DNA from: Hemiscyllium ocellatum
Lineage: Eukaryota
Direction: 5' to 3'
NCBI RefSeq assembly: GCF_020745735.1
Contig: NC_083409.1
Span: forward strand, 18,868,341-18,932,340
Length of the DNA: 64,000 bases
Position 1 is the stretch's first letter. Each line of letters begins with the position of its first letter. A model generated the notes under the pieces. The model was not told where the DNA came from and made no database searches. It saw only the letters and a program-made list of their open reading frames with translations. The position numbers and the translations under genes were made by a program. Of the stretch, positions 2,503-44,173 are shown in pieces.

Positions 2503-2742
2503 GGCAGCCCAGTGCAGGAGCCCCAGTCCCGAAAAGATGTGCCCCGAAAAATCCAAGGGGAAATTAACTTTGCTTTTGCTGAAGATGCAGTCGAGATTGT
2601 GACACTGGTTCATGGAGCGGCTGAGGAGCTGTACAAATGGCAGGAACTTGGCCATGATTTGGGGGATTTGCAAATACCCCCAGACTTCGGGAATTATAAA
2701 TGGAAGGATGATGAGAGTGTCAGCAGAAGAGCTTATTGTGAG
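2503..2742 (+). CDS. CEP350: CEP350-like exon (GSPVQEP...DDESVSRRAYCE)
   Basis: caacag acceptor, 240-nt open frame, gag|gtgaga donor. It splices in frame to the clearly CEP350-like exon at 4504. Confidence 0.8.
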
Positions 2743-4503
2743 GTGAGACCCAGATTTTGCATTTGAAAACAAAATTATTTTTTCTTTGTTAAGCAAGAAA
2801 CGTATGGGTTAAGAGTGCTCCATTGCAGCTCTGATTGATGATATGTATAACAGAGCATGTTAAAAACATTATCTCGATCCTGATGACTGCATTGAATTCA
2901 ATTTACCATTTTGCCCCTTCCCTAAAAATCCAAAGCCCCTTTCTCCTCCACTGTTTGTACTCTCCCATTATTAATTTATCATCATCATCATCATAATATT
3001 ATCCGTTAAATCCCATCTGTCATAACTTTGCCCAGTCTGAGAATCTGTAGATTCCGTTTCTATTTACATAATATATAGTGTCCCTTCCAGCCACTCAGTG
3101 TTTTTTTTTCAAATTCTTCTCTATCGTTTCTGTCTTTCTATTGCTGTTTCCATTGGTTGATAATACAATATTTGATTATTATTCACCTTCTTAAAACTCT
3201 CTAGAATCTTGATCTAGAAGCTAGAATCACAGGTCATTCCGTAACTTTCAGATAAAGAAAGCCTGAGAAGTTGAACTTCTCAATCTGTGATCATGTCTGT
3301 ACCTCTTTTCCTGATAACATCTTGAGAATTTGCACGATGTTGAGATTCCCAAAGTTGACCAAAGTATTCTAAGATCTTATGCAGCTTAACGTGGCTGTAA
3401 TTGTTTGTGTCTATGTGGCCTTTGCTCTCATCTGATTAGGATCTTACCATTTCAGGTGTAATTCCTTTTCTTATCCACACGATGTATTACTTCATCCCAC
3501 TCTTAACTTCAATTCCATCTTCCGGTAAATATTCTTCTGTAACTGTCACTGCAGTATAGTTCCATCTCTGTCCCTTCAACCCAAGTTGGAATCATTTGAT
3601 TCCTTTCTCTTAAATTCCCAAGTCAAGATTGTGTTTATTACGATAACAATTAAGGACGATCTGAGTATGGGCTCCTGTGGACCCCTTCCATTCTCCACAC
3701 CTTTCTTGTGTGAAATCTTTATTTTACCATGACCTGCATTTTCCCAACTACCTCTATTCACTTGACTGTGCTCCCCTTCATTTGAGGTGCCCCTGAGTTT
3801 TGCCTTTGGTCTTCTCAGAGGTAACTACTTGAAATACTTTCTGAAAATCCATGTAAACCATGTACACTTTTTTCCCACTAATCTGCTCCTTTACTAATAC
3901 AGCCTTGTCAAATCGCTTGCTAGTTCACAACCTGCTAATTAGAAATTCATGCTAATTGCTATTGTCTCTTTAACTGCTCGTCTTTCACTCCATGTTGTTA
4001 ACTCTTAATTTACCAACAAATGACACAAAACTAACTGATTGAGAAATTCCTGTTTTTCTTCTTATTGAATGAGGAGTTAGCTGCCCTCCAACCCTCTGGT
4101 CGAATTTTAGGAGGTAATAATTGGAGCCATGATAGTTTGTTTTCTATTTACAGCATGTCCCACAGATGTCATTCATTTTGTTTCAAAGATTTGCCTCCTT
4201 TTATGTTGTGGTGCCTTCCTTAGTATTATGTAGGTAATCTTGTCTAATACATCTGCACCTAGCCTTGGTAGTTCTGCAATCCTTTTAAACCCTTTCTCTC
4301 ATCTCTCTTTTGCCTTCTCTACTGGAATCAATGAAATTCTAAATTTATCCTTGATTCAGATCGTGAATCAAACAGTTGTTATTTTATATATTTTGAACAG
4401 TATTCCCTTTTATTTTCACTGTCGTGATCTAACAAGCTTTTTTTTGGGTGGAGAGGACGTATCTAATATAATATTTTCTTTGTTACTCTTTTACTACTTC
4501 CAG

Positions 4504-9024: not shown

Positions 9025-11208
9025 AGTTCCTCACTTACCTGTCTTTTAGACCCAGTTTTACAGAAAGTACAGGTCAGGGTTCTTTGCTTAACAAGAGTTA
9101 CAGTTTGTTACCAAAAAATGCAAATAATTACCAACCACTGGCATATAACTACTAACTAAAACTAACAACCCCTCCCACATGCATTCCTCATTACACATAC
9201 ACAGATAGAAAAACAGGGACAAAGTGCACTGGGTGTTTTGCATAAAGAGAAAGACTGGGAACGTACTTCCATGGTACCTATTGATGGCTTTTCTTGAGAT
9301 AATCCTTGTGCTGATCAGAATGCTGTTCCTTGATCTTCCTTCTCCAGATGCTTCCATTGGTTTTCAGGAGGCACAGGGTGACTAGTTCACACGTGAACAA
9401 GTCTGTAACTTATCAATTAATAGCCACAGCTTACAGCAAGTGCTGAAGGGAAAAGAAGCTGGTTTTCTTCAGACTTTTCACTGCGGAGACAGATCCTCAA
9501 CTTGTGGAGATCTGGTGATTTCTCAATTCACTTGTATACAGCTCCAGCTGATCAGCTACCTGGGAGCCAATCTCCGTTTTTGTCCGAAGGATATTTGTCT
9601 GTGGCCTAGTGACTAGTTAGCTACTTACTATTGACTGAAGCTCCCATTGAACACAGCCCTTGGCTGGAGCTTGTTTGAAAGTGAGTAGCACTTAGTGCGT
9701 GTCAGGGAACTTGCTAATGAAAAGTGCCAGCAATCCCTGAACAATTCTTGGGTTTTAAAATTGCTTTATCCCCATTTGAGTCCAAAATCAAAAGTATAGA
9801 AAAATTAGAAGACAGTTTTTGCAGACCTTTCCAGTCCTCCCCATGTGTTGGTGTGTCACAGCACAACATGTGTCAGCAGATTGATGTGTTTAACAGGTCT
9901 GTAAGAACACTGTTATCTTCAGGCCACACCACCACCTTGACTTGGTCAGATATCACCTTTCCTTTTATATTTACATGGTTAATCTCCTGGAATCCCTGAG
10001 CTTGCAGTGCTGTGGGAGTACCTTCAACACGCAGGCTGCAGCACTTCAAGATAAATATCTTTCCAAAGAGAAATGGGGTGGCGGGGGGGGGTGCAACATG
10101 CATCCCAACACTGAAGTTTTAAAAAGTTGGGTGCTTGGTATGCCAAAAATTTCAAATCATTGCTTTTTTTCCCTCTTTGGATCAAACATTTCCAGCTGAT
10201 AGTGTGCGTCCATTAGGCAAGGGTTGGAAGTCTCTGCTCTGCACCAGCTCAAGTAGTGATACCGTCAGGCCACAGCTACACCAGGGCAGAGGGCCAGCCT
10301 AAAGTTAAAACGTGTAATTCAGTTACACTCACCAGCTCTTTCCTTGTGGTGGGTATTCCTTTCTGGTTGTGCGTACTGAGTAAAACATCTCCACTCGTTC
10401 ATTATGTTATTGGCAATATTGGTGATTGATCTCACTGGTTTGAGGAGTTGTGGCATTGGAATCAAATTCAAAACCAGGTAGGAACAGGATTAAGCCAGCA
10501 GCACCCTTCAGTCTGTTCTCATACTCCTAATCATAGCTGATTTGTATCTAACTCTGTATATTGATCTCCTAATTGTTTCAAACTGTTACTTGACCTTACA
10601 AATATCTCTCAACACTCGTATTGAAATGCTCTAACAGTCACAATAGTTTTTAAGGCTGGAAGGAACCAGATTATTTTAGTAGTGTTTGTGTGACAAAAGG
10701 CTTCTTCACATCACCCCCCTAATTAACCTAAGTCTTATTTTCCTGCATGCCCTATTTCTGGCATGCCTCGCTAAAGGAACTAGTTTCTCACTTCCTTCGC
10801 TGTCAAATCGTTTAATCATCTCAGTCACTTCTATAGATCCATCCCCCAGTCATCTTTACTCAAGAGAATGCAGGCCTCGTTTATCAAATAAAAGTAAAAA
10901 ATGCTGGAAATATTCAGGTATAGACCTAATTTATGTAGCCAGTCCTTAACCTTCTCAGACTTGGTATTGTTTTGTACAAGAATAACTAGTGACTCTCCAT
11001 TGATCTCGCAGCGAGCCCTCCAGAACTCCTGTCTAAGCTCCACTTGCTGTGTGGGAATGGCCACTTGTGTGATACTGGGCACAAGGAAAGTGGGAGGCCT
11101 GCAGTCTGAGTGATTTCAGGGCAAACGCTGCTCAGTACGAGAGGAAAGAGCTGTAACAAATAAATCATGATATAAAAACAATAACACCCCCTCTGTTTTT
11201 TCTGGCAG

Positions 11209-11373
11209 GTTCAAGAGCTTTATGAGGAGGAAGCCCAATGGGTGAATTATGATGAGGATGAGCTTTGTGTGAAGATGCAGTTGGCAGATTATATTTTTGA
11301 AGTTCTGATAAAAGACACAATAAATGTACTGAATCAGATTCAGGGGCAACAGTTAAAACTCATGTTATCCTAA
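11209..11373 (+). CDS. CEP350: CEP350-like terminal coding exon (VQELYEEEAQWVNYDEDELCVKMQLADYIFEVLIKDTINVLNQIQ...*), DUF4378-type C-terminus
   Basis: tttttctggcag acceptor; near-identical to the recalled CEP350 C-terminus VQELHEEEAQWVNYDEDELCVKMQLADGIFETLIKDT; TAA at 11371-11373. Confidence 0.95.
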   Translation, partial: VQELYEEEAQWVNYDEDELCVKMQLADYIFEVLIKDTINVLNQIQGQQLKLMLS

Positions 11374-17800: not shown

Positions 17801-18011
17801 AAGCCTTTCAGCTGAAGCTTTGGTGTTTGCGCTCAGTGTGTATTATCACTTGCTCATTGCTCCCCTTTTACATGATCATGGAGAGAGAACTCTTGCTGGT
17901 GCAGGTTTTTTTAATCATCTCAGGATATTGAAAGCTGTGAGCACAGTGCAGTCACTTTCACGGACAAGATGGTGAGTCCCACAGACAGGAAACAAATGAT
18001 GAGACTAATCT

Positions 18012-21715: not shown

Positions 21716-22419
21716 CATCATGATCCAAGTTTTAAATGGACCCTTACTCGTGATAATACAGTTTTCAATGTTTCTCTCCCCTTATGTGTTGTGAAGAGTT
21801 TGCAAACATGTTTTGATGAGGACAGTGCATCTTCAACACCGTGTGATGGATTGGGCGGCTGTTTGAATTCTCACTTGTGATAATACAGTTTTAAATGTGT
21901 CAGTTTTACTTTCCCCACTCTCTGGGGGAGTGCCGCTGTCACTATCCCCACCCTTCACTCTCGGGGTGATACCATTTTTAGCATCCTTTCTGTCTGAGAA
22001 TGTCCCTGTTCTTGTCCCCCACTCTCTCAGGGACGGGGTGGGTGTTTCACATGCACCTGGTTTGTTAGCTCCATTTACTCTCTTGTGAAATGGGCAATCC
22101 CTGTTTTACTCTGGTAACAGTGAGTTAAAGCCCAATAGAGTTCACCCTTCATCTCCATCATATCTCAGGGCCTAAGGTTGGTCAGCACTCTCATGCTCCA
22201 GCACATCCCACCACTTCCCGCAATTTTCTCTCTTTCCTATCTTTACTGAACACCTTGTATCCAGGAATCCCCAAGGTCAAAAATCATACGACACCAGGTT
22301 ATAGTTCAACAGGTTTATTATATGACACAAGCCTCGCCCTTTCTTCAGGTGTTCAGAGGAGCAAGCAAGGTGAATTTAATCATCAGAGAAAACAAACTCT
22401 GCTGTTCATTTCCTTCTCG

Positions 22420-22544
22420 GTTGACTCCGTTCTCCTCAATGACATGAACAAGAGACAAGGCAAGAATAAAGAATATAAGGACACTATCAATGACCTTCTG
22501 AAATTCATAAGAAACCTCATCCAGCACTTTGATGAATAGAAAGA
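22420..22544 (+). pseudogene. RNASEL: RNase L-like KEN-domain exon ([40 protein letters not shown])
   Basis: Aligns to human [42 protein letters not shown]. In-frame TAG at 22537-22539, acceptor reads CG, donor reads GCATGT. Confidence 0.85.
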
Positions 22545-22854
22545 GCATGTGAACAATAGTTGGTGGCAATATTTTCCTGCTTTTTCAACTTTTTGCATTG
22601 ATTCAAAGGCAGAATGAGCACCTTCCAAACCCAAGGCCATTTCCATTAGAAGGACAAGTGCACAGATACACAGATTACCACCACCTTCAAGTTTCACTCA
22701 AATCTCCATAGCATCCTGATATGAAAATATACTACTGTTCCTTCAGTGTCGCTGGGTCAAAATCTTGGACTACCCTCCCTTAGGGCATTGTGGGTTTATC
22801 TACAGCACATGGACTGCAGCGGTTCATGAAGGCAGCTCACGACCACCTTGCAAA

Positions 22855-23199
22855 GGGCAGCATTGTGGGTCAGTGGTTAGTGCTGCTCCCTCGCAGCGCC
22901 AGGAACCTGGTTTCAATTCCACCCTGGGATGACTGTCTGTCTGGAGTTTGCACATTTTCCCCATGTCTGAGTGAGTTTCCTCCACACACTACATAGATGT
23001 GTAGGTTTGGTGGATTAGCCATGCTAAATTGCACACAGTGTCCAGGGATGTGCAGGCAGGGTGGGTTAGCCATGGGAAATGCAGCATTACAGGGATGGGG
23101 CTGATCTAGACGGGTTGCTGTTTGGTGGGTTGGTGTGAACTTGATGGGCTGAATGGCCTGCTTCCACACCATATAATGATTCTATGATTCTATGATTCT
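22855..23199 (+). mobile_element. HE1-type SINE with (GATTCTAT)n tail
   Basis: tRNA-like head, GGAGTTTGCAC core, tail repeat. Confidence 0.85.
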
Positions 23200-25479
23200 C
23201 AAGGGCAACTAGGAATCTGGCCCAAACAGCAACACCCATGTCCTCCAAGTGAGTTTTAAACAAAAACATCATCTGCACTGCTTACTATTCCATCAGTCTT
23301 TGTGTCAATGTGGAACTATGATTCTCATTAATACATACAGTAAGTAGTTAAGGCCTCACCACAGAATCCTTGTGGAACACCACTCGTCACTTTCTTTCTC
23401 TGTTGTCTGTCACTAAACCAGCCTCTGAACCAAGTCAAACATTCATCTTCAATCCCATGGGTTTTAATATTGGTCAGCAGACTGTTTTGTGGTAAATGAT
23501 CGAGTACTTCTGAAAGTTGATAAGCCTATACATCCTATCAACTATTTTATTTAATGCATTTGGTTTGTTAGTTAAAACCTACCCATCACAAATCTATGTG
23601 GGCTATTTCCAATTCTCTACATGCTCATTCTCTCGGCTGTTAATTATAGATTCCAATGAAGCTCCTAAAAGAGATGTTAGATTGACCAGGATATAATTTC
23701 CTTGGTTCCCTCACTCATCTTTCTTCAACCCGTGGAGTTACAGCAAGACATTTTCCAAACTAAAGGAATCATTGCTGCTTCGGAATCTGATGGGAAAAGC
23801 CTCTGAAACTTCTTCCCCCTCTTCCTTTAAACCCCTGAGGTCCTGGAGATCTGTCAGCCTTTAGAGCTCACTCTCCAATGCTGTTTTCTGGCATGTATCA
23901 AGTTTTGTGAATTCCAATCTTCCTTTCATTATTAACCTCCCTGGAATGGAAGCTGCATTATCCTGTTCCTTGACCGTGAAGACTGACACAACTAATTATT
24001 GTTCACATCGGTCATTCCCTTAGTCTCATTCATGGAATTCCCAGTTTGTTTTTAATGGGGTCACATTGCAATGGAGCTCCCATGATTTTCTAATTTTCGT
24101 GTAAAGCATTTGTGTTAGTCTTGTGACCTCTTGCAGGTCTCTTTCTCCATCACTTGCTTTGTAACTGTTGCTTCCTTTTTGTCTTCCTTTGCAGTTCTTC
24201 ATATCTTCCTTCAGTTGCCTGAAATCTCACTGATATTCCCACATTTGAGTGTTCTCATCTTTAGTTTTCTGTTTTCTCTCACTTATTTTATCAGTGATGA
24301 TGTGCTAACAAGTGGGGACCTGTTCCATACTGAGCTGAATACATCTTTAACCATCTCCCCATCTCATTGGGAGTCTGATCTGACAATTTTGGCTGACACC
24401 AATCTCTGTTGCATTCTATTTCCTGGGACGTGGGTGTCACTGGCATCGATCAGCATTTGTAACCCAAGACTAATTGCCCTTGAACTGCTGGCCTTGCTGT
24501 GGCCTCTCAGAAGGCACCTAAGAGTTAACCAGATTGCTGTGGGGCTAGAGTCACATGAAGTCCAGACTGGGTAAGGCTGAGGCTGGACAGCATTCAGGGA
24601 TCACTAGTGGTCACCATTAATGAGGCTTGCTTTGTGATTTGAATTCAAATTCCAGCATTTGTCACTGGGGGAGATAGTACAGTTTGATAGATTGTGGCAG
24701 GACCTCTGTTTTGTATCCCACCTGAAAGACAACAGCTCCCTCAGTTTTGCAGTGTCAGCCTTGACTGTGTGCTCAACATAGGAATTAGGAGCGGGAGGAG
24801 GCAATTCAGCCCTTTGAGCCCGCTCCGCCATTTAACATGACTGTGGCTGATCTTATCCTGGTCTCAACTCCACTCTCCTGCCTGCTCCCCATCGTTCTTT
24901 ATCTCACGTTTAATCAGAAACATATCTTTCTTGAGCCTGTTGATTGATTCTGCCTCCACTGCACTCTGGGGCATTGAGTTTCACAGATTCACAACCCTCT
25001 GGGAGAAATAGTTTCACCTCATCTCAGTTTTGAACCTACTTCCTCTCACTCGATATCGATGACCTCTTGTTCCAGACTGTCCCGCAAGGGGGAGCATCTA
25101 TTCAATATCCACCCTATCAATCCCCTTTCACATTTTCTATCCCTCAATCAGATCCTTCCTCGTTCTTTTGAACTCCAGTGAGTACAAGCCCAATCTATTT
25201 AACTGCTCTTCATAGGACAACCCTTTCATTCCTGGAATCAGTTTGGGGAAAATCCTCTGAACAGCCTCCAGTCCCACCACATCCTTCCTCAAATGGTGTT
25301 AGGTGTAAGGAATTGGGTTTGGGTGGGTTGCTCTTGGGAGGGTCACTGTGGACTTGTTGGTTCGAGGGGCCTGTTTCCATACTGTAAGTAATCTAATCTA
25401 ATAAGCAGACCACAATTGGACACAATACTGCAGTTGTGTCTCACCAATGCCTTCCATATGTTCCAGTTTGTAATGTATG

Positions 25480-26310
25480 ATCAATTCATGTTCAGATGGG
25501 CCAATGGGCAAGGAGTGGGAGATGGAGTTTAATTTAGATAAGTGTAAGGCATTGCTTTTTGGGAAGGCAAATCAGGGCAGATTCCTGGAGAGTGTTGCTG
25601 AGCAAAGAGACCTTGGAGTGCAGACTCACAGTTCCTTGAAAGTGAAGCCATGGGTAAACAGGGTAGTGACAAAGGTGATTGGTACACTCGCCTTGATTGG
25701 TCTGTGCATTGATTATAGGAGTTGGGATGTCATGTTCTGGCTGTCCACCAAAGTGGCCATTGGTGAGGACACCTTGAGAATACAGGGCTCAGTTCTGGTC
25801 TTCCTGCTCTAGGAACAATGTTTTTAAACTTGAAAGGGGGCAAAAAAAAGATTTGCAAGGATGTTGTCGGGATTGGAGGGTTTGAGCTACAGGGAGAGGC
25901 TGAATCGATTGGGGCTACTTTCCTGGAGCGTTGGAGGTTGAGGGGTGAACTTATGGAGGTTTATAAAATCATGAGGGGCATCGATAAGGTGAATATCCAA
26001 GGTCTTTTTCCCAGGGTATATCAGTCCAAAACTAGAGGGCATAGGTTTAAGGTAATAGAGGAAGAATTTGTAAGGGAACTAAGGGGCAACTTTTCATGCA
26101 GAGGATGGTGCATGCACGGAATGAGCTGCCAGTGGAAGTGGTGGAAGCTGGTACAATTACATCATTTATATAGCTCCATGAATAGGAAGGGTTTAGAAGG
26201 ATATGGGCTAAATCATGGCAAATGGAACTAGATGAGGATGTCTGGTTGGCATGGATGAGTTGAACCGAAGGGTCTGTTTCCGTGCTGAATGACTCTCTGA
26301 CTAAGACACT
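25480..26310 (+). mobile_element. CR1 LINE 3' fragment (older minus-strand CR1 debris at about 23290-24330 and 24770-25470)
   Basis: MEFNLDKCK.L.FGKANQ, RLRGELMEVYKIMRGIDKV. Confidence 0.88.
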
Positions 26311-26620
26311 GGTTTAAATAGACAAAGCTTCTGAGACAGAGGTGACAGTGCTCCCACTGACCAGGTTCCAGTTTGTACAGGGCTCCGCTCTCAGCTGGGT
26401 GGTTGGGAGTTGGAGCTGATTTTAAGCTGTATTTTGGAGAGGGGTAAGCAACCTTTCTGATCAAAGCCTCCAGAAATGTGAAGGTGCAATTTATGAACAA
26501 TTCAGAGCAATGATGTACTCAGTTATTTTGACTCCTGGGGCCTGCTGAGTACTAAACCTCAGCATTTAGGGATTGCTGAGAAATATCTTCATTGACTTGG
26601 ACATTAATTGTACTTTTCAG

Positions 26621-26741
26621 GTTCCACAGTTTAATGAAGAGTCCAGAAGATTATAGCTTTGGGTTATTTCCCGATCTCATTGTTGTTGTCTCCAAGGCTG
26701 TGAAGGACACAGAGTGGAAGAAGTACTTTCCAAAAGAATAG
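26621..26741 (+). pseudogene. RNASEL: RNase L-like terminal exon ([39 protein letters not shown])
   Basis: tacttttcag acceptor in phase 2; aligns to human [33 protein letters not shown]; TAG at 26739-26741; absent from the ORF track (too short). Confidence 0.85.
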
Positions 26742-26840
26742 AGGCTGCTCCTGTTTTCAAAGGGCTGCCATCTCTTGAGTGGAAATGAGACAGAACCACA
26801 TGCTTCAGGGCTAGAATGGAAAGAAGGAACTTACATTTGT

Positions 26841-27169
26841 ATCACAGAATCCCTATAGTGTGGAAGTAGGCCATTCAGCCTATCGAGTCCACACCACCCC
26901 TCCAAAGGACATTCCATCCAGACCCCGATGCTATCCCTGTATTTTCCAATGGCTAATCCACCTAGCCTGCTCATCCTTGACACTATAGAGAATTTAGCAT
27001 GGCCAGTTTACCAGCCTGCAGATCTTTTGGACTGTGGGAGGAAACCAGAGCACCCGGGGGATGCCCACGCAGACATAGGGAGAATGTGCAAACTCCGCAC
27101 AGACCTGCCTGAGGCGGGTCCCTGACGCTGTGAGGCAGCAGTGCCAACCACTGAGCCATCGTGCCACCC
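26841..27169 (-). mobile_element. HE1-type SINE
   Basis: Reverse complement of head, core and tail motifs. Confidence 0.85.
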
Positions 27170-27457
27170 CAAATGTATAGCACTTTTTGTCACCTGAGAA
27201 TGTTCCAAAGCATTTTACTGATAGAGATGTGGGTTTGGAACATGAATAAGGTTACATTTGTGCCACACAGCTGCCAGGCAATGACTGTCTCCAACAAGAG
27301 AGAATGTAACTATCTTGCCTTGATATTCAGTAGTTGTGTGCTGTGTGCACACATTACCTTTAACAAAATCCATCCCTGTATATGTACGGTTTTGAACTCT
27401 ACCCACCAGTTAGTCATCTATGAGCCTGCAAGCTGCACAGACCAAGATCAATTCGCT

Positions 27458-27767
27458 GAATCCCTACAGTGTGGAAATAGTCCTCCACACTGACCCTCCA
27501 AAGAGCATCCCACTCCCCCACCCCATTACTCTACATATTCCCTGACTACTGCACCTAACCCACACACCCCTGAACACCATGGACAATTTAGTTTGGCCAA
27601 TTCAGCGAACCTGCACATCTTTCGACTGTGGGAAGAAACCGGAGCATCCAGAGGAAACCCACAGAGACGCGGGGAGAATGTGCAAACTCCAAACAGACAG
27701 TTGCCCGAGGCTAGAATCGAACCTGGGTCCCTGGCGCTGCGGGACAGCATTGCTGACAACTGAGCCT
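27458..27767 (-). mobile_element. HE1-type SINE
   Basis: Reverse complement of head, core and tail motifs. Confidence 0.85.
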
Positions 27768-29462
27768 CAGTGCAGTGAAATCTTGCTTGCTGTAATGTCT
27801 GCTTCATGATTGTAATGTGTTTTATTGCTTTAACTAAACTAACTTACAAAGTTAATGGATTGATTATGGGACCATCATCTTAACTATATCATGGTGAAAG
27901 GCTGAAGAAAACACTGTACAGATGAGGCCTATTGCACAAGCAGCTTAATCTGCAGGTAGAATATACAAATGACAGTCTTCGATTGTGTGAAAGTGTATGA
28001 GGCAACATATGGGCAAGGAACAAAAGTAGGCCACTCGGCCCTTATGGCTGATCTGATTTTAACCTCAACTCTACATTCTCTGATAATGTTTCATCTCTTC
28101 AGTCATCAAGAATCTATCTATGGTCATGGCTGATCATCGAGCACTACACTGTAATCCCTCCCTACCCCATATCCCTTGAATCTTTAGCCACAAGAGCTAT
28201 CTCTACCCCCTTCTTGAAAACATAATGTTTTGGCCTCAACAACTTTCTGTGACAGAGAATTCCACAGGCTCACCACTCCCTGGGTGAAAACATTTTTCCT
28301 CATCTCTATCCGATAGAGTTTACCCCTTAACCTTAAACTATGAGCCTGGTTCTGGACTTCCCCACCATTTGGAACATCCTTCCTCCATCTAACATGTCTC
28401 GTCCTGTTCCAATTTTATACCTTTGTACAAGATTCCCTTCCTTCATTCTTCTAAACTCCAATGAACACAATCCTCACCAACTCAACCTCTCTTTATACAT
28501 CAGTCCTGCCATCACAGAAATCAAATGGCATTCAGTAATTAATATTAATCACCTCATTATGGAAGACAGACTTTGAAGGTCAGGGTGAGAGGACAATCAA
28601 TGCCAGTTCTAAAATTCAGGCTTCTGTTGCAGTAAGCTCAATGGAATCATTGGATACAATCTGACAACAGCAGAAAGATGGGAGGTGTAGATGGAGGGTG
28701 CAGACAGCGGTGTAGACAGTGGGTTTGGACATGGGGTGTAAACGGAGGGTGCAGACAGTGTGTATAGACAGTGGCATCGACAGAAGGTGCAGATGCTGGG
28801 TGCAGACTGTGCTGTAGCCAGTAGTATAAACATGTGCTAGACTTTGCGTGGTGACCAGACGAGTGGCTGTGTGGAATCACACAGAGAGCAGTCAGTGAGC
28901 CTGACACAGTCAGGGACACCCCCTGGTGCTGAAGGTCATGCTGCTGCTGGCAAAGGCTGCATTTCATCTGAAACTGTACTCGCTCCCTACACATTCCCCT
29001 CTTGTCCCCATATTCCTCACGACAACCCCTGGAGATGTCAGCCAGCGCTCTGTGCTTTTGCTCAGTCTCCATTGGCCTTGCTTCCATTAGTCTTGACCCT
29101 CCTTCCAAGCTCCTACTTGGGCCTTCATTGAAGCTTAAACCATTTCCTCTGACCCTTGATCATGTATTTGCCATCCTCGATAGCCTATACTAGTCACCAT
29201 TAACCTGCACAGCCCTCTCAGCATAGATACAACATAGAAAAGGCATTTTGGCCCATTGAGTCTGCACGAACATAATTACAACTGAAGGCACTTTTATCCC
29301 AATTTCCTGCCGTTGTCCCAAATCCATGAATGTTATGATATTCAAGGGTTGTAAGGTATCTGCCCTCCACTATCTTCCCTGACAGAGGGTTGCGAGTTTA
29401 TAGTTTGTGTCACATCAGACTCATGAAGCTGAATGAAATCTCAACTCTTTGGGCTGTTTTGT

Positions 29463-29800
29463 GAGTGGCATGGTGGCTCAGTGGTTAGTACTGCTGCCTC
29501 ACAGCACTAGGGACCCGGGTCGATTCCAGTCCTGGGTATCTGTGTGGAGTTTGCACAGTCTCCCCGAGTCTGTGTGTTTTTCCTCTGTATGCTCCAGTTT
29601 CCTCCCACGATCCAAAGATGTGCAGCTTAGGTGAATTGGCCATGCTAAAATTGCCCATAGTGTTCAGGGATGTGTTAGTTAGGTGTGTTAGTCAGGGGAA
29701 ATAGCCAAGGGGAGAGGATCTCGGGTGAATTTCTCTTCGGAGGATTGGTCAGGACGTGTTGCACCAAATGGCCTGTTTCCACACTGTAGGGATTCTATGA
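29463..29800 (+). mobile_element. HE1-type SINE
   Basis: Head GGCATGGTGGCTCAGTGGTTAG, core, tail CCTGTTTCCACACTGTAGGGATTCTATGA. Confidence 0.88.
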
Positions 29801-30202
29801 CAGTCCATTCCAGATTCCCACCACCCTCTGAGTGAAAGAGGTTCTTTCCCAAATCTCATTTGCGATGTTCGTAAAGGAATCTTTCAAAATATTCATATTG
29901 CTCAATGTCCTTTAGCTCTTTCGCTCCTTGTTCGATAAGTGTTATTTTCCTGATAAAATATGAGTTCCCTGATGGGGTTTAACCTTGTCCAATCAGGGAG
30001 CCTTGGCTGACAGATAAAAATGGGAGTGTCAGAAGGACTGATACTCTGGGACCAGACTCTGAATAACAACCTGCCAACCATCCCCCTCCTTCTGTTACCC
30101 TCAATCTCCTCATGCTTATTCTTGATACCCCTTCAATCCAGCTTGTGCTTCCTTTGGGAGAGGTTGACCTTCCCTCCATCACCCAGCAACGTGGTCATCA
30201 TC

Positions 30203-30506
30203 CCTGCTAGCACTGCTGCCTCACAGCACCAGGGTCCCAGTTTCGATTCCAGCCTCGGGTGAATGTCTGTGTGGAGTTTGCACATTCTCCCTGTGTTTGC
30301 CTGGGTTTCCTCCGGGTGCCCTGGTTTCCTCCCACAGTCCGAAGATGTGCAAATCAGGTGAATTGGCCATGTTAAATTGCCCATAGTTTTAGGTGCATTA
30401 GTCAGAGGGAAATGAGTCGGGTGGGTTTCTGTTTGGAGGGTCGGTGTGGATTGGTTGGGCCGAAAGGCCTGTTTCCACACTGTAGGTAATCTAATCTAAT
30501 CTAATC
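30203..30506 (+). mobile_element. HE1 SINE (slightly 5'-truncated)
   Basis: Core motifs and (AATCT)n tail. Confidence 0.88.
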
Positions 30507-31164
30507 CCAGAGGAGCATAGTCCCACTCACTCATTACAGACAGAGCCAAATGGTGGTGAGTTTAATCCAAGGGTCACCACAGCTGAGGCAGGGGGAGAGA
30601 AGGTGGTACCTTCATGTTGGTAGTGTCCTTCATTAATCCACTGCAACCCCCCTTGGGGCTGCAAGAATTCAACCACCCTCGTTCAGACAGCTCCCCTTGC
30701 TGTAAGGTAATATTACTGCACGTAGTTTAGAGCTAATTTACCATTGAAATATGACTATGGGTAGTCAGCACTGGCTGGGCAGGCAGCCACAACTGCAATG
30801 ACCCTGGATCCAGAAAATCCCCTTGTAATCAGGCAACACATTAGGGAGCACAGTGCCCACTGCCTCTGAAATCCCTCCCTTACTGAGAACACACTCGCAG
30901 TATTCACCTTTCTCAGTTGCCATCTCAATTTCACTGTAAATTCTATCAACTATGATCCTGCCCCACTAGCTGCCTGATGAAGGACCTCTGAAAGCATGTA
31001 CTTCCAAAGAAACCTGTTGGACTATAACCTGGTGTTGTGTGATTTTTAACTTTGGCCATCTCACTGAGGCACCATTTCAGACTGAACTGTTTTTCATTCA
31101 TGATTTGAGATGATTAAAGCCAAGTCTTCAATTCCCATCACAAAGCCCATTCTCTATCCATCAC

Positions 31165-32645: not shown

Positions 32646-32974
32646 CTACACACATTCTGATCTCCTGATGCTCTTGCTGAGGGGAGAGGGGAGGGTCACG
32701 TGGGTGAGGGCACAGGAGAAGCGAGCGTTGGACTCCCAGTCAGACCCAGAGAGGGTCAGCACTCTGCTGACACTGTAGGTGCTGTCTGAAGCTCGCAGGT
32801 AGTTGCTGGTCTGAACCCCGTCCGAAATGACTGCACCGTCCTTCTTCCACTGCACCTCCAGCTCATCGGGATAGAAGTGATTGGCAAGGCACACCAGGGT
32901 GGCAGTGCCCTTGGCATTGACCTGCTCCAGGGAGGGGGGCAGCAGGGTCAGCTTGGGCTGAGTGTTCTCACGGC
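32646..32974 (-). CDS. IGKC: Immunoglobulin kappa (NS4/type III) constant exon
   Basis: ctttcag acceptor; intact frame (S)RENTQPKLTLLPPSLEQV..ATLVCLANHFYP..VQWKKDG..STYSVS..FSCALTH..SECV*; C1-set Cys/Trp and terminal inter-chain Cys. Confidence 0.97.
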
Positions 32975-35729
32975 CTGAAAGATAAGAGAAACAATTTTAA
33001 TCCCTGCCTTTTGAAGAAACTTCAACTCTCAGAACATTCACTGGTAAAATGTTTGAACATTTGTATCCAATACCTACCAAACCCGACAAAAAAAACCAGG
33101 TATTGTTTAAATTGCTTCTTGGGAGTGAGTGTCACGAGCAGGGCCAGTATTTATTTCTCATCCTTAATTGCCCCGAGAAGGTGATGGGGAAAGACAAGGA
33201 ACAGGTTTGGACTCTTGTTTAGGGAATGAATGTGGGCAGCTGGAAGGGCTATCAATGGGGGAGCAGTTTAGTGACAGTGATCAGAATTCAGTGAGATTGA
33301 GAGTAGAGATGGAAATGGAGAACCATGCAGCAAGTGTAAACGTTTTCACTTGGGAATGAACTATTTTACTAAACTGTGCGATAATTTAGTAAAAGTGGAC
33401 TAGAACCAACGCCATCATGTGAAATCAATGTCAGGGCAGTGGGATCCCTCAAAAGAAAAGACAGAGATTGTTCAGAATCTTTTCCCACAATGAGTAAGGG
33501 TGGGACTCCCAAATCCAGACGCTCAGCCTGGGATGTCAAAAGGCAGCCAGAGTAGGGAAGACCAAACAGGGAAGGTGATGTTGGTTATCTGGAGTTATCT
33601 GCAGAAAGCCCAGAGGAGGATCGAAAATGCAGGGGTGGCATTGAACAGGACCTGAGGAAGGCAAAGACAGGATTAACTGTGTCCAACTGAATCAAAGAAA
33701 TCACAACAAACAAGAGGATTGGGGGTCAGGTACTGATACGGATTGAGAACTGGTTGGCAGACAGGACAGGAAGAGCGAGTCTTTTTCTGAATGGCAGATA
33801 TTTCCCAGTTGGGGTACCACAGGGATCAGTCCTTGGTGCCCAGTTATTCATAACATATAATCATCGAGTCAGAGTCAGAGAAACCCAAAAGGCCCAACGG
33901 ATCATTGTGTCAAAAAACAACTCAATACTTCTCATCAATTTACCAGCATGAGAGAATTAGATGCGGCATGTGTTCAAGAAGGAATTAGATACAGTTCTTA
34001 AGATTAATCAGTTCAAAGAATGTGGGGAGCAAGCAGGAACAGGGGACAGTGTTGGATAATTGACCATGATCATACTGAATGCTGGAGCAGGCTTGAGGGG
34101 CCGAATGGCCTACTGCTGCTCCTGTGTTTTATGTTTCTGTCCGTTTCTCAGATAATGAAGGAATGTCTCTCGTCAGCTTGAGGCTGGAAGTCAGATGTGT
34201 GTGCAGGGGGAAGATGTGACCATGGTGATTAATGAATGCAGGTCAGTGAGATGGTTCAGAAGACACATGGGATAAACTGATTTTCTTTTTCCCTTGATGG
34301 AATGAGGGCATTGCTGGATCGGCAGCATTTATTGCCCATCGCTAATTGCCCAGAGGTCATTTTAGAGTCACCCACATTGCTGTGGGTCTGGGGTCACATG
34401 GGAAGGATGGCAGTTTCCTTCCCTAAAGGACATAAGGGAATCAGATGGCTTTTTTTCCTGACAATCAACAAGTGTTTCATGGTCATCATCAGACTCTTAA
34501 TTCCAGATTTTTAAAATTGAATTCAAATTCCACCATCTGCTGTGGCAGGATTCTGCCCTGGTCCCTAGAACATTAATCTGGATCTCTGGATTAACAGCTC
34601 AGCAATAACACTATTAGGCCATCACCTCTCTTATCTCATTTTTGGTTGAGAGTGAAAGCAAGAAATTTGTTTATTCTGGAACTTTATCAAACCCCAGTTA
34701 GAGCACAGTGAGAGAACAGTGTACAGTTCTGGTCACCACATTACAGGAAGGATATGATCCCCTGAGTGATGGGGACAGTGGTGGATTTTGTCAGGAATGG
34801 GGAGTTTTAGTTTTGAGGAATGATTGGTTTGGCTGGGACTGTTTTCTTTGGAACAGAGAAGGCTGAGGGGAGATTTGATCAAGGCGTGTAAAATGATGAG
34901 GGGCCTGGATAGAATTTGTAGGAAGGACTGATTTCCATCAGCAGAGAGGGCAATAACCCTGGGGAGAGATTGAAATGAATTGGGGACAGGGTTCGAGGTG
35001 AATTGAGGAGTAATTGTTTTCACCCAGAGGCTGATGGGATCTGGGACTCACTGTCTGAAAGGGTAGGAGAGGCAGAAACCCTCATCACATTGAAAACAAC
35101 ACTTGGATATTCACTTGGAACAGCGAAACATCCAGAGCTATGGAGCAAGAGCTGGAGAGTGGGATGGAGCTCGATCCCTCTTTAACAAACCTCGGATTAC
35201 CCACAGATGAGGAGAACTTTATCCGAGAACATTGGAGCAGACTTGGATCCAAACATTTCGGGAAGGAGTCACATTGGCGTGTCTGTGTAGAATGCTCTTG
35301 AATACATTTCAAACCTTACTGCATACCATTGGGCTGAGATCAAGGGTGAGGCTGCAAAGAGTCTCAGTGACCTGGGGTCAGGCAGGGTCACTGCTCCTAA
35401 TGACCCCATGCCTCCTGGAAGGTGAGAGTGCGCAGACAATGGGTGAGGTTCAGGATCAAGAGACTCTAACCTTAAAGAAAGACCTGCATTTGTGTAGCAC
35501 CTGTCCCCAGCTCAGGATGTCCCAATGGCTCTTTCCAGCAGACTTTGTGCAGTGAGATCCCAAACACAGTATGATAATTAGCAGAGAAATAGATTTTTAG
35601 TGATTTTTATTGGGGGATAAATAGTGACCAGGTACACCAGAAGGAACTGCCTGCTCTTCATCCAACAGTGCCATCTGAAAGACTCCCAGTTCAACCAAAA
35701 AAAAAGTTCTGTGAAAGTGGAGTTGCAGG

Positions 35730-36699: not shown

Positions 36700-39680
36700 A
36701 ATTTTTGAATATTAAAGGAACCATAAAAGTACAGGGAAAACGAACAATAGAACAAACTTAAAGGGTTTGTATCTAAATGCACGAATCATTCTGAGTAAGG
36801 CAGACAAAGTGATGCCATAAATCGAGGTAAATTGAGTTTCCAAGGAATTTAAACTAGTTAAAGTGGAGGAGGGCTCAAGAGAGGCTATTCGGTTTCCAGA
36901 AGGCATACCAGGAGAGAGAGTACAGAAAGGAACAAGAGTCGAGCATCAAGCACAGCAGATAAGAGGATAATGATGAGAAAGAGAGCAGTCAATGCAGGAC
37001 TGAAGGTGTTGTACTTAAAAGCACACAGTATACGCAATGAGCTGGTAGTGCAGATTGAAACTGGCAGGTACGATGTTGTGGGTATCACAGAGACATGGCT
37101 GTAAGGGGATCCGGGCTGGGAACTAAATATCCAAGGATATATGTCCCATCAAAAGAACAGGCAGATGGACAGAGGGGGAAGAGTTGCCTTGTTAGTACGA
37201 TATTAAATTAAATCAAAGCAAGAAGTGAGATAGAGTCAAAAGGTGTAGAATGTGTGTGGGTAGAGTTGAGGAACCGCAAGAAATAAAGAATATGATGCAA
37301 GTTATGTCCAGATCTCCAAGCAGTAATCAGGGTGTGGAGAAGGAAATCAATCAGGAGACAGAAAAGCCGTATACAAAATGTCAGGGCAGACCTCAATGGA
37401 TAGGTGGACTGGGTAGCACGTCTCAAGAAAAGGTTTTCATGGATGTCTACAAGATCGTTTTTGGAGCAGCTTGCGGTTGAGCCATTATGGAACAGGCAGT
37501 TCTGGATTCAGTGATGTGGAATGAGGCAAACTTGATTAATGAGCTGAAGGTGAAAGTATCCTTCTGGAAAAATGATCATAATATGATAGAATTCCCCCTG
37601 TAGTTTGAGAGGGAGAAGCTGCAATCAGATGGATCTGTATTTCAGTTGAGTAAAGGGAACAACAAAGGCATGAGGAAGGAGTTGACCAGAGTTGGTTGGA
37701 AGGGGAGCCAAGCAGGTAAGATGGTGGGGCAGCAAACAGCAGGGTTTCTGGGCATAATTCAGGAAGCAGAGAAGGAATTCATCCCAAAAAAGAAGAAACA
37801 TACTAAGGGGAGGACAAGGCAACCATGGCTGGTGAGGGAAGTCACGGACAGCATAAAAGCAAAAGAAAAAAAATGCACAATGTGGTAGAGAAAAGTGGGA
37901 AGCCAGAGGGTTAGGAAGCCTTTGAAAACCTGGAGAGGATAAATAAAAAAGCATTAAAGGTGGAGAAGGGGAAATGTGGGGGTAAGTTGGCCGGTAATAC
38001 AAAAGAAGATTGCACGAGTTTTATCAGATGTATAAAATGGAAGAGGAAGGCAAAAATAGACATTGGAAAATGAGGCTGGAGAAAGTATTCTAGGAAGTGA
38101 AGAAATAGCAGAGGAATTGAATCGAAGCTGAAAGGTTGAATGTGGATAACTCACCCAGACTAGATGAACAACATGAGTGTGTTCTGAAGGAGATCACTGA
38201 GTAAATTATGGAGGTATTGAAGAAGATCTTTCAGGAATCAATGGAGTCAGGGTATGACAGTGTGGTGGGCAGGGATCTGATGGGGGCAAGGGACTGGAAA
38301 GTGGCTCACATAACAGCCCTGTTTAAGAAGGGAGGGAGGAGGGAGAAGATGGGAAATTATAGGCCAGTTAGCCTGGACTCAGTTGTTGGTAAGGTTTTAG
38401 ACTTCAATTTAAGGATGAAATTGCAGAGGACTTGGAGGTGCAATTGTAAACTAGGGCTGAGTCAACATGGCTTCATCAAGGGGAGGTCATGCCTGGCAAA
38501 TCTGTTAGAATTCTTTGAGGAGGCAATGAGCCAGTCAGACAAAGGAGAGTCAAAGGAAGTAATCTATTTGGATTTCTAGAAGGCCTTTGACATTAGATAA
38601 GAGCATACAGTGTGAGGGCCGAGGCACTGGCATGGACTAAGGACTGGCAGGTTGGCATAAAGCAGAGAGTGAGGAAAAATGGCCGTTGATGACTGGTAGA
38701 GTCCTGTAGGGGTCAATGTTAGGACCTTAACTATTCACATTATACATTAACAATCTGGATGGAGGAAGTGAAGACATTGTTGCTAAGTTTGCAGATGACA
38801 TGAGATAGGTGGAGGGATAGGTAGTGTTGAGGAAGTGGGAAGGCTGTAAAAGCTCCTGGATAGGCTCGGAGAGTGGGCAAAAAAGTGGCAGATAGAATAC
38901 AATGTGTAACAGTGTGAGGGTGTGTACTTTGGGAGGAAGAAGAGATGCAAAGACTGTTTGCTAAATAAGGAAAGCCTTTGGAAATCTAAAGCACAAACGT
39001 CATTCAGGTTTCCCTTCAGGTTAACAGGCAGGTCCAGTTTGTGCTTGGGAAGGCAAATGAAATGATAGCATTCATTTCAATAGGGCCAGAATACAAGAGC
39101 AGAGATGTACTGCTGAGGCTGTGTAAGGCGCTGGTCAGACTGCATTTGGAATATTGTGGACAAATTTCGGACCCATATTCTAAGAAACCATGGGCTGGCA
39201 TTGGAGGGGTTTACAACAATAATCCAGGCGATGAAGGACTTATCATATCAGGCGTGCTCGGGGACTCTGGGTCTGTACTCGCTGGAGTTTAGAAGGATGA
39301 GGAGGGATCTTATTGAAATTTACAGAATACTGATCGGCCTGGGTAGAGTGGATGTGAAAAAGATGTTTCCAAAAACAGGAGAGACTCGGTAACTAAGGCA
39401 CAGCCTCAGAATGAAGGGGCAACCCTTTCGAGCTGAGATGAGGAGGAATTTCTTCAGCCAGAGGGTGGTGAATCTGTGAAACTCATTGATACAGAGGACA
39501 GTGGAGGCCAAGCCACTGAGTGTATTTAAGACAGAGATAGATAGGTTCGTGAGAGTTAAGGGGATCGAACATTCCTGTGGAGTAGGCAGGAGAATGGGGT
39601 TGAGAAGCATATCTGCCAAGATCAAATGGCAGAGCAGATTCCATGGGCTGAATGGCTGATTTCTGCTCCTATTTCTTAAA
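36700..39680 (+). mobile_element. Decayed CR1 ORF2 (APE endonuclease + RT + 3' tail)
   Basis: LYLNARS-like and GITETW-like endonuclease motifs, NYRPVSL, QHGFIKGRSCLANLLEFFE; many stops. Confidence 0.9.
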
Positions 39681-42170: not shown

Positions 42171-43224
42171 ACTCCATGATGATGAGCAGCTGGAAAAGCT
42201 GAGACTTTTTTCCCTCAAGTGTAAGAGTCTGAGGAGTGACAACATAGAGGATTATAAAACCATGAGGGACATAGATAATGTGAATCATACAGGAAGCAGG
42301 TGACATTTTGTAGAAATGGCAAAAAATATTCCTGAAGATCATTCCAGGGATGAGGAACATCAGTTATTAAGATAGTTCGGAGAATTTGGGACTGTCTTCT
42401 TTGGAGAAGGCTGAGAGGAGATTTGTTCGAGGAATTAAAACCATGAGGGGCCTGGATACAGTAAATAGGGAGAAAATGTTCCCAATTGAGAAAGGATTGA
42501 GACTGAGAGACCACAGATTGAAAGTAATTGGGAAAAGTAACAAAAGTGAGATGGGGAACAACATGTTCAGCCAGTGAGTGGTTAAGGTGTGGAATGCGCT
42601 GCCTGAGAGTGTGGTGGAGGCAGCTTCAATTAAAACATTCCGAAGGGAATGAGACTGATATTTGAAAAGGAACAATGTGCAGGGTGACAGGGAGAAGGCA
42701 GAAGAATGACACTCAGTGAATTGCTCATTCGGATGAGGGATGGGCAGGCAGGATGGGCAGAATGGCCTCCTTGTGCACTGTAACAATTCTGTGATTGTGT
42801 GGTTGAGCAGAGTTAAAGCTGGGGGAGGTGGGAGCTCGGTGTCTCACTGTGCTGCTGCTGCTGAGGTCAGTGAGATCAGAGACTGGGACAGGGAGCCAGA
42901 GCTCACATCAAACTCTGCCCCGTGTCCGTCACACTGAGACTGGCAGGAGGCTACTCACTGATTTCACTCCATGCTGCAGGAATGGGACCACAGGCTGCAA
43001 ATGGACAGAGCTCCTCCACACGGTGAGTAAAACTTACTGACTTATATCTTGCTTTTTAACGGGGTTATAGGACTAACGAAATACAGGTGTACACCGTATG
43101 GGACGCGGTGTTCCTCAATCAAACATTTCCTTCACTGCAACACTTCAACAATTCAGTATTTGTGTTTTATAAATTGTGTTTCAGTATTGACAGGTTTAAT
43201 AACGGAGGATTGAGGTTTACTTAC

Positions 43225-43662: not shown

Positions 43663-43690
43663 GATTTTTGTATGGCTCCGTATCACTGTG
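43663..43690 (-). promoter_or_regulatory. V recombination signal sequence, 12-bp spacer (CACAGTG-12-ACAAAAATC)
   Basis: Consensus heptamer 43690-43684, spacer 43683-43672, nonamer 43671-43663; a 12-RSS on V is the kappa configuration. Confidence 0.95.
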
Positions 43691-43987
43691 AAGGCCAGCT
43701 GTAATGCTGCTGACAGTCATAGTCAACAACATCCTCATTCTGAACGTTGCTGATTGTCAGGGTGAAACTGGTCCCTGATCCACTGCCGGTGAATCGATCG
43801 GAGACTCCTGTGAATCGAGTTGTTGCAGCATAGATCAGGAGAGAGGGTTTGTGACCTTCTCGCTGCTGGTACCAAGCAAGGTAGCTGCTAATGCTTTGAC
43901 TGGCCGTACAGGTGAGTGTTGCAGTCTGGCCCAGTCCCACTGACAGCACCGGGGGAGACTGGGTCATGATGATGTCCCCACTGATAC
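43691..43987 (-). CDS. IGKV: Ig kappa (NS4-like) variable exon, unrearranged
   Basis: cctcag acceptor; (G)[71 protein letters not shown]; C23, W35 and C88 present. Confidence 0.97.
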
Positions 43988-44173
43988 CTGAGGGGTCAGA
44001 GAGAAACACAGTAAAGTCAGAACTGTCACAGAAAGAGCCGGTCAAATGAGAGATTGTTGGAGACACTGAGCATTCCTCTGGTTTCAGCATTTTCCCTTCA
44101 ATCACAAGTCAGTGGAATTGGAGTGAAATGGAGAGCAGCTAAAGATTCAAGGTGGAAGGAGAGAGATTTGTAC

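What the first reader, a model, noticed from the sequence alone, without database searches (positions are those of the whole stretch)
22420..26741. Hidden RNase L-type KEN ribonuclease gene between CEP350 and the Ig cluster
Seen: two exons about 4 kb apart splice to [11 protein letters not shown]...[62 protein letters not shown]. The equivalents of human D661, R667 and H672, which are needed for nuclease activity, are retained. The phase-0 and phase-2 boundaries and the immediate C-terminus (TEWKKYFP vs TEYRKHFP) favour RNase L over IRE1. It is nearly invisible in the ORF track. The OAS-RNase L pathway is poorly characterised in cartilaginous fish and is reported lost in teleosts.
Basis: partly seen in the sequence, partly recalled or inferred. 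Interest (0 to 1): 0.8.

Follow-up and report, generated by a model that had tools for sequence, protein, structure and literature searches.

The report
Dead RNase L gene tail copy
The two exons are real, but they are a broken copy of only the last two exons of the shark antiviral RNase L gene, lying tail-to-tail with an antibody light-chain gene, so this is an ordinary dead gene fragment and not a hidden working gene.

Summary
Window 22420-22544 and 26621-26741 (+) match the last two coding exons of shark RNase L: 93-95% protein identity to the annotated Chiloscyllium and Hemiscyllium "2-5A-dependent ribonuclease-like" genes. RNase L is the top solved-structure hit for each exon, and IRE1 does not appear.

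It is not a gene. Aligned to the working C. punctatum gene, the first exon has three lesions:
- its splice acceptor reads CG, not AG;
- a lysine codon has become an in-frame TAG;
- its splice donor reads GC, not GT.

No other RNase L exon is anywhere in the window, although the working gene has all of them within 19.6 kb upstream. DNA similarity to the working locus starts 238 bases before the first exon, inside an intron. It then runs at least 8.7 kb downstream, towards an Ig light-chain constant exon on the opposite strand. C. punctatum holds at least one more diverged copy of the last exon.

Best reading: a partial duplicate pseudogene, probably copied along with an Ig light-chain cassette.

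RNase L is already annotated in more than ten cartilaginous fishes, and the pathway was shown to work for elephant shark proteins in 2023. This scan has reported the same kind of dead tail copy on other DNA of this genome. Interest is low.

The parts
22182..22419 (+). Intron-derived sequence upstream of the penultimate-exon relic. This is the left edge of similarity to the working RNase L locus. The former splice acceptor at 22418-22419 reads CG.
   Evidence: blastn gives window 22182-22271 against L001 36692-36780 (84%) and 22272-22618 against L001 37241-37597 (89%), with nothing colinear further upstream. The alignment shows AG in C. punctatum and CG here.
22420..22544 (+). Relic of the penultimate RNase L coding exon (KEN domain, holding the ...[9 protein letters not shown]..H... 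catalytic motif). It is 125 nt long and starts in phase 0.
   Evidence: Pfam PF06479, PDB RNase L, 93% identity to P0007, and a DNA alignment to L001 37398-37522.
22537..22539 (+). In-frame TAG at a codon that is lysine in all 14 RNase L orthologues compared.
22545..22546 (+). Former splice donor. It reads GC here and GT in the working gene.
22547..26620 (+). Relic of the last intron, about 4.1 kb, with retroelement-like open frames at 25477-26231. Its 3' part (from 26007) is colinear with the C. punctatum intron. The acceptor AG at 26619-26620 is intact.
26621..26741 (+). Relic of the last RNase L coding exon, with its native stop at 26739-26741. The frame is open, but it carries three replacements, one of them at a Tyr that is invariant in the 14 orthologues compared.
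   Evidence: PDB RNase L, 92% identity to P0007, DNA alignment, protein alignment.
26742..30862 (+). 3' UTR and downstream flank, colinear with the flank of the working C. punctatum RNase L gene at about 84-92% identity. Similarity runs to the end of the comparison contig.
32649..32996 (-). Ig light-chain constant exon with an open frame, tail-to-tail with the RNase L relic. It is the neighbour that was probably copied along with it.
   Evidence: Pfam C1-set 76 bits. Best solved-structure hit is named 'T6 light chain' (7fjs_L, E=2.5e-49).
43686..44105 (-). Ig light-chain V segment.
   Evidence: Pfam V-set 58 bits. ORF listed.
11206..11370 (+). Possible CEP350-like terminal exon. This is a lead only.
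   Evidence: The feature search in the protein atlas gives DUF4378-type clusters at 0.90-0.93. There is no Pfam hit. Whether CEP350 carries that motif is my recollection and was not tested.

Best explanation
This is a non-processed, partial pseudogene. A genomic segment holding the last two exons of RNASEL, the intron between them and several kb of 3' flank was duplicated, probably together with the Ig light-chain cassette that lies tail-to-tail downstream.

The copy never had a promoter or exons 1-5 (two 5' coding exons that together hold the ankyrin repeats and most of the pseudokinase, then the exons for the rest of the pseudokinase and the first half of the KEN domain). It has since drifted. 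The penultimate exon has lost its acceptor and its donor and gained a nonsense codon. The last exon has replaced an invariant tyrosine. It makes no ribonuclease.

Shown here: the homology, the lesions, the missing exons, the breakpoint, and a further copy in C. punctatum. Inferred: that the copy travelled with the Ig cassette, and that this genome still holds an intact RNASEL elsewhere.
For: 1. Identity. Each exon best-hits RNase L. The pair is 93-95% identical to hemiscylliid RNase L. In a tree of the C-terminal 81 residues the window copy sits in a supported clade (97/93) with Chiloscyllium and Hemiscyllium.

2. Lesions. Against the working C. punctatum gene, the acceptor is CG where the gene has AG, a lysine codon is TAG, and the donor is GC where the gene has GT.

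3. Truncation. tblastn with nine RNase L proteins finds only these two exons. No blastn match covers C. punctatum exons 1-5. In that gene exons 1-5 lie 1.7-19.6 kb upstream of the penultimate exon, and the window offers 22.4 kb. Colinear DNA similarity begins at 22182, inside the preceding intron, and continues to 30862.

4. Drift.
- The window branch is 0.051, against 0-0.012 for the working orthologues.
- Four private replacements include an invariant Tyr.
- In the last exon, all three replacements fall on the window copy; the two silent differences set L001 apart from the window and L002.
- dS is 0.099, about the same as the flank divergence.

5. Multi-copy family. C. punctatum contig BEZZ01055574.1 (L002, product P0019) carries another diverged last exon. 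It is 88-89% identical to both the window copy and the working locus, and the three form a star.

6. Neighbour. An Ig light-chain constant exon lies 5.9 kb downstream on the opposite strand.
Against: - The exons (4.1% diverged) and their immediate flanks are less diverged than the far flanks (about 9-15%). Pairwise dN/dS is 0.26, lower than the roughly 0.5-0.6 expected if the copy was neutral from the start. Counts are tiny (4 silent, 5 replacement, 1 nonsense) and neutrality is not rejected. A period of constraint or gene conversion from the working gene cannot be excluded.
- I could not see the rest of this genome. The presence of an intact RNASEL in it, and the number of tail copies, rest on unchecked notes of this scan.
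- The working locus could not be followed far enough downstream to show that an Ig cassette sits there too, because L001 ends at the contig end.
Confidence: 0.88

Rival explanations
1. This is the decayed orthologue. The species has lost RNASEL, and what remains at the ancestral locus are the last two exons, the 5' part having been deleted or rearranged away.
For: The 3' flank is colinear with the flank of the working C. punctatum gene for at least 4 kb. Only one copy is visible in the window. No full-length RNase L-like protein from non-hemiscylliid carpet sharks came up.
Against: The copy falls inside the hemiscylliid RNase L clade, and all three sequenced members of that clade have intact annotated genes. 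C. punctatum itself holds a working gene plus at least one extra diverged last exon. The window copy, that copy and the working locus are about equally distant from each other, which is what a duplicate family gives and not orthologues. Flank divergence of about 10% is far more than the near-identity of hemiscylliid orthologues at protein level. Earlier notes of this scan report several such tails and a kinase-bearing RNase L locus on the same sequence piece (untested).
Confidence: 0.07
2. This is a working RNase L gene whose upstream exons lie beyond the window start. The stop would be a sequencing error, a polymorphism or a recoded codon, and the GC donor would be functional.
For: GC-AG introns exist. 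The last exon, its acceptor and its stop are intact. The catalytic Asp, Arg and His are kept.
Against: There are three independent lesions in 129 bases, including a CG in place of the acceptor AG with no other AG for 30 bases. Similarity to the working locus stops 238 bases upstream of the exon, where the working gene continues. An invariant Tyr is replaced.
Confidence: 0.03
3. This is an IRE1/ERN-type KEN fragment, or a chance match.
For: None beyond membership of the shared Pfam family PF06479.
Against: No IRE1 chain appears up to E=10. Identity to shark RNase L is 93-95%, with intron and flank colinearity to the RNASEL locus.
Confidence: 0.01

Closest known systems
RNASEL (2-5A-dependent ribonuclease) of hemiscylliid sharks, e.g. 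Chiloscyllium punctatum XP_072429488.1 / GCC19658.1, C. plagiosum XP_043555869.1, Hemiscyllium ocellatum XP_060686052.1
   Same: The last two coding exons have the same exon phases, the same intron position and 93-95% protein identity. Intron and 3' flank are colinear at 84-92%.
   Different: Exons 1-5 (ankyrin repeats, pseudokinase, first half of the KEN domain) are lacking. The penultimate exon has a nonsense codon and has lost both splice sites. An invariant Tyr is replaced.
Extra last-exon copy in C. punctatum (hypothetical protein chiPu_0025276, contig BEZZ01055574.1)
   Same: It is another stand-alone, diverged copy of the RNase L last exon with the same flanks, and shows that such fragments are multi-copy in bamboo sharks.
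   Different: It is only 89% identical to the window copy and carries different private changes. Its contig starts only about 210 bases upstream of the exon, so whether it carries the penultimate exon cannot be seen.
Mammalian RNase L KEN domain (PDB 4o1o pig, 4oau/4oav human)
   Same: The catalytic ...[9 protein letters not shown]..H... motif and the C-terminal ...FPDL...TE.(K/R)K.FP motif align colinearly.
   Different: About 45-60% identity over the aligned stretches. Here there is a fragment, not a protein.
IRE1/ERN1 KEN domain
   Same: Same Pfam family (PF06479).
   Different: No detectable pairwise match to either exon.

Membership tests
RNase L (functional gene) | KEN ribonuclease domain (Pfam PF06479) closer to RNase L than to IRE1 | tested here: met
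   PF06479 scores 24.3 bits (cut-off 23.3) on profile positions 42-78 of 127. Only RNase L chains are hit in the PDB. The copy sits in the clade of hemiscylliid RNase L. Only the second half of the domain is present.
RNase L (functional gene) | N-terminal ankyrin repeats that bind 2-5A | tested here: not met
   tblastn of nine full-length RNase L proteins finds nothing for residues 1-735 anywhere in the window. No blastn match covers the large ankyrin and kinase exon of L001.
RNase L (functional gene) | Pseudokinase domain between the ankyrin repeats and the KEN domain | tested here: not met
   Same searches.
RNase L (functional gene) | Uninterrupted reading frame with usable splice sites | tested here: not met
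   TAG at 22537-22539, acceptor CG at 22418-22419, donor GC at 22545-22546.
RNase L (functional gene) | Catalytic residues of the KEN domain (equivalents of human D661, R667, H672) | tested here: met
   They are present in the alignments to the pig and human chains and to 14 orthologues. This says little for a copy only 4% diverged. Another invariant residue, a Tyr in the last exon, is replaced.
Non-processed partial duplicate pseudogene | Keeps the intron and flanking DNA of the parent gene, so it is not a retrocopy | tested here: met
   The 4.1 kb intron is retained, and intron and 3' flank are colinear with L001.
Non-processed partial duplicate pseudogene | Disabling lesions and truncation relative to the parent gene | tested here: met
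Non-processed partial duplicate pseudogene | Relaxed selection on the copy | tested here: inconclusive
   The branch is long (0.051 against 0.012 or less), and the replacements fall on the window copy. Pairwise dN/dS is 0.26 from only 9 changes.
Non-processed partial duplicate pseudogene | An intact parent gene elsewhere in the same genome | not testable with these tools
   Only this window is readable. C. punctatum has both a working gene and an extra fragment. Notes of this scan mention a kinase-bearing RNase L locus 5.4 Mb away, unchecked.
IRE1/ERN | Best similarity to the IRE1 KEN domain | tested here: not met
   No IRE1 chain up to E=10.

The most novel reading that the evidence does not exclude
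The RNase L tail copies may not be pure debris. Their exons are better conserved than their flanks (4% against about 10%). This could mean ongoing gene conversion between the working RNASEL and its many dead tails, with the tails acting as a reservoir of KEN-domain variants. It could also mean that the intact last exon, with its acceptor and 3' end signals, is used as a terminal exon or 3' end element by neighbouring transcripts in the amplified Ig, CEP350 and RNASEL-tail unit.
Probability: 0.04. Interest if true: 0.5.

Novelty: new member of a known kind. Interest (0 to 1): 0.1.

Why it matters
It matters little in itself. It removes a false lead, since this is not a hidden antiviral nuclease gene. 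It also shows that genome scans of bamboo-type sharks will keep meeting RNase L tail fragments next to Ig light-chain cassettes.

The one modest point of interest is structural. The fragment marks the edge of a duplication unit, with its breakpoint inside the intron before the penultimate RNASEL exon. That edge could help reconstruct how shark light-chain clusters multiplied from a locus next to RNASEL.

Tried and rejected
- **Upstream exons.** I looked for them with motif scans (ankyrin, kinase), with tblastn of nine RNase L proteins at E up to 100, and with blastn against the whole C. punctatum gene. Nothing was found.
- **Chromosome-level loci.** I tried to fetch the loci of Mustelus asterias and C. 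punctatum. No DNA was returned because the files are too large. P0007 was not on record. The older C. punctatum scaffold (L001) served instead.
- **Global alignment.** A MAFFT global alignment across the exon-F region was spoiled by a 460-bp indel, so I used the blastn matches instead.
- **Other carpet sharks.** I searched for orthologues (whale shark, zebra shark) to date the duplication. None were returned, so the age relative to speciation stays open.
- **CEP350.** Pfam gave nothing on three candidate ORFs. Only a feature-based lead to DUF4378-type clusters came up.
- **Formal tree with IRE1.** I considered it and dropped it. No IRE1 sequence matched either exon at all, and the DNA-level colinearity with the RNASEL locus settles the question.
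- **Literature.** A search for an RNASEL or CEP350 link with shark Ig clusters found nothing relevant.
Full report
**What is there.** By comparison with a working orthologue, their true limits are 22420-22544 and 26621-26741.

- Each piece, searched alone against all solved structures, has RNase L as its best hit: pig 4o1o at E=0.0046 and 0.045, human 4oau at 0.0051 and 0.13.
- The two matches are colinear, on pig chain residues 641-668 and 676-711.
- No IRE1 chain is listed up to E=10.
- Pfam Ribonuc_2-5A passes its curated cut-off on the first piece (24.3 against 23.3 bits, profile positions 42-78 of 127).

**Closest relatives.**
- An exhaustive HMMER search with the 42-residue first piece returned two proteins. 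One is a full-length 811-residue "2-5A-dependent ribonuclease-like" of the shark Mustelus asterias.
- Two word-index searches seeded with full-length shark RNase L then found annotated full-length RNase L-like proteins in a further nine elasmobranch species: two Scyliorhinus species, Carcharodon, Heterodontus, Chiloscyllium punctatum, Hemitrygon, Mobula, Pristiophorus and Narcine. The C. punctatum cluster also holds proteins of C. plagiosum and Hemiscyllium ocellatum, making at least 12 elasmobranch species in all.
- The window peptide is 93-95% identical to the three hemiscylliid (bamboo and epaulette shark) proteins, 79% to Heterodontus, and 50-69% to the other cartilaginous fishes.
- In a maximum-likelihood tree of the C-terminal 81 residues it sits in a supported clade (97/93) with the three hemiscylliid proteins. 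Its own branch is 0.051, against 0-0.012 for theirs.

So it is RNase L, not IRE1, and it derives from the hemiscylliid RNASEL lineage.

**Why it is not a gene.** I obtained the genomic locus of the working C. punctatum gene (L001, scaffold BEZZ01001581.1) and mapped its seven coding exons. They lie at 17811-17963, 22192-23886, 28821-29021, 30826-31044, 35579-35713, 37398-37526 and 42897-43013. All upstream exons are therefore within 19.6 kb of the penultimate exon.

- The window offers 22.4 kb upstream of its penultimate-exon relic. Neither tblastn with nine RNase L proteins nor blastn with the whole locus finds any of exons 1-5.
- Colinear DNA similarity to the working locus starts at window 22182, which matches L001 36692. 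That is inside the intron before the penultimate exon.
- Similarity then runs through both exons, the alignable part of the intron and the 3' flank to window 30862, where L001 ends.

Base-by-base alignment shows three lesions in the penultimate exon (coordinates checked):
- The acceptor dinucleotide is CG (22418-22419) where the working gene has AG.
- The codon at 22537-22539 is TAG where the working gene and all 14 orthologues compared encode lysine.
- The donor dinucleotide is GC (22545-22546) where the working gene has GT.

The last exon keeps its acceptor, open frame and native stop. It carries three replacements, one at a tyrosine that is invariant in all 14 orthologues.

**Mode of evolution.**
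- The 243 coding bases differ from C. punctatum at 10 positions (4.1%): 4 silent, 5 replacement and 1 nonsense. This gives dS 0.099, dN 0.026 and a ratio of 0.26.
- The flanks differ by about 9-15%. dS therefore equals the neutral flank distance.
- The low dN partly reflects constraint on the working gene's own branch. With so few changes, neutrality of the copy is not rejected: P=0.08-0.21 under a model with one neutral and one constrained branch.
- I polarised the last exon with a third copy (below). All three replacements fall on the window copy, and the two silent differences set the working locus apart from the two dead copies. That is the pattern expected for a dead copy beside a constrained gene.
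- A period of constraint or gene conversion cannot be excluded.

**It belongs to a multi-copy family.**
- A search with the last-exon ORF found a 39-residue "hypothetical protein chiPu_0025276, partial" of C. punctatum on a separate 2-kb contig (L002).
- Its DNA is 89% identical to the window copy and 88% to the working C. punctatum locus over about 700 bases.
- The three sequences form a star, with 26, 33 and 43 private changes.
- C. punctatum therefore holds at least one extra diverged last exon besides its working gene, and the window copy is a third member of the set.
- Earlier notes of this scan report several "dead RNase L tail" copies next to Ig kappa cassettes, many shortened CEP350 copies, and one kinase-bearing RNase L locus 5.4 Mb away on the same piece of this genome. 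I could not check those notes. My own results agree with them.

**Surroundings.**
- An Ig light-chain constant exon lies 5.9 kb downstream on the opposite strand, at 32649-32996 (open frame, C1-set 76 bits; best solved-structure hit is a chain named 'T6 light chain', 7fjs_L). It is tail-to-tail with the RNase L relic.
- A V segment lies at 43686-44105 on the same strand as the constant exon (V-set 58 bits).
- The intron relic holds retroelement-like frames.
- Upstream, an ORF at 11206-11370 (+) resembles DUF4378-type C-termini in a feature search. From memory, this motif is shared by CEP350.

**Mechanism.** The most likely history is as follows.
- A segmental duplication had its left breakpoint in the intron before the penultimate RNASEL exon.
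- It copied the 3' end of RNASEL together with the adjacent Ig light-chain cassette.
- The RNASEL piece had no promoter, no ankyrin sensor and no pseudokinase dimerisation domain, so it was dead on arrival and has drifted since.

The homology, truncation, lesions and second copy are shown. The co-duplication with the Ig cassette and the presence of an intact parent gene in this same genome are inferred.

**Novelty.** RNase L in cartilaginous fish is not new.
- It was reported from the elephant shark survey in 2007, together with its absence from teleosts (PMC1845163).
- OAS and RNase L of Callorhinchus milii were shown to work together in a yeast assay in 2023 (PMC10400998).
- NCBI annotates full-length genes in many sharks and rays.
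- A partial duplicate pseudogene is an ordinary object, and this scan has met the same kind of copy before on other DNA of this genome.

**Verdict.** Interest is low.

Noticed in passing
P0001 (not in the window): A 449-residue hypothetical protein of the teleost Larimichthys crocea (TMS01848.1) has three tandem segments resembling the second half of the RNase L KEN domain (LLRFIRNL.EHY ... FPDLF). Teleosts are reported to lack RNase L.
   Followed up: no
window 26641-26643; L001 and L002 at the same column: At one codon of the last exon, the working and the dead copy of C. punctatum share AAT (Asn). The window copy and the C. plagiosum and H. ocellatum proteins have Ser. Either there has been gene conversion within a species, or the window genome is not C. 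punctatum.
   Followed up: partly
window 22271/22272 against L001 36780-37241: About 460 bases of the working gene's intron, just upstream of the penultimate exon, have no counterpart in the window copy. This is an indel close to the left edge of the duplicated segment.
   Followed up: no
window 32649-32996 (-) and 43686-44105 (-): The Ig light-chain constant exon has an open frame, but its V segment is about 10.7 kb away. That is a long V/J-to-C distance for a shark cluster, and it is padded with retroelement fragments.
   Followed up: partly
window 11206-11370 (+), also 2458-2763 (+): Non-repeat ORFs upstream may be exons of a CEP350-like copy. The first resembles DUF4378-type C-termini in the atlas feature search only.
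   Followed up: partly
searches: No full-length RNase L-like protein of non-hemiscylliid carpet sharks (whale shark, zebra shark) was returned, although lamniform, carcharhiniform, heterodontiform and batoid ones were. This may be a limit of the word index or of annotation.
   Followed up: no
P0018 (Heterodontus francisci isoform X1): An annotated isoform reads past the penultimate exon into a different, proline-rich C-terminus in place of the last KEN exon. It is a predicted splice variant that would lack the end of the nuclease domain.
   Followed up: no
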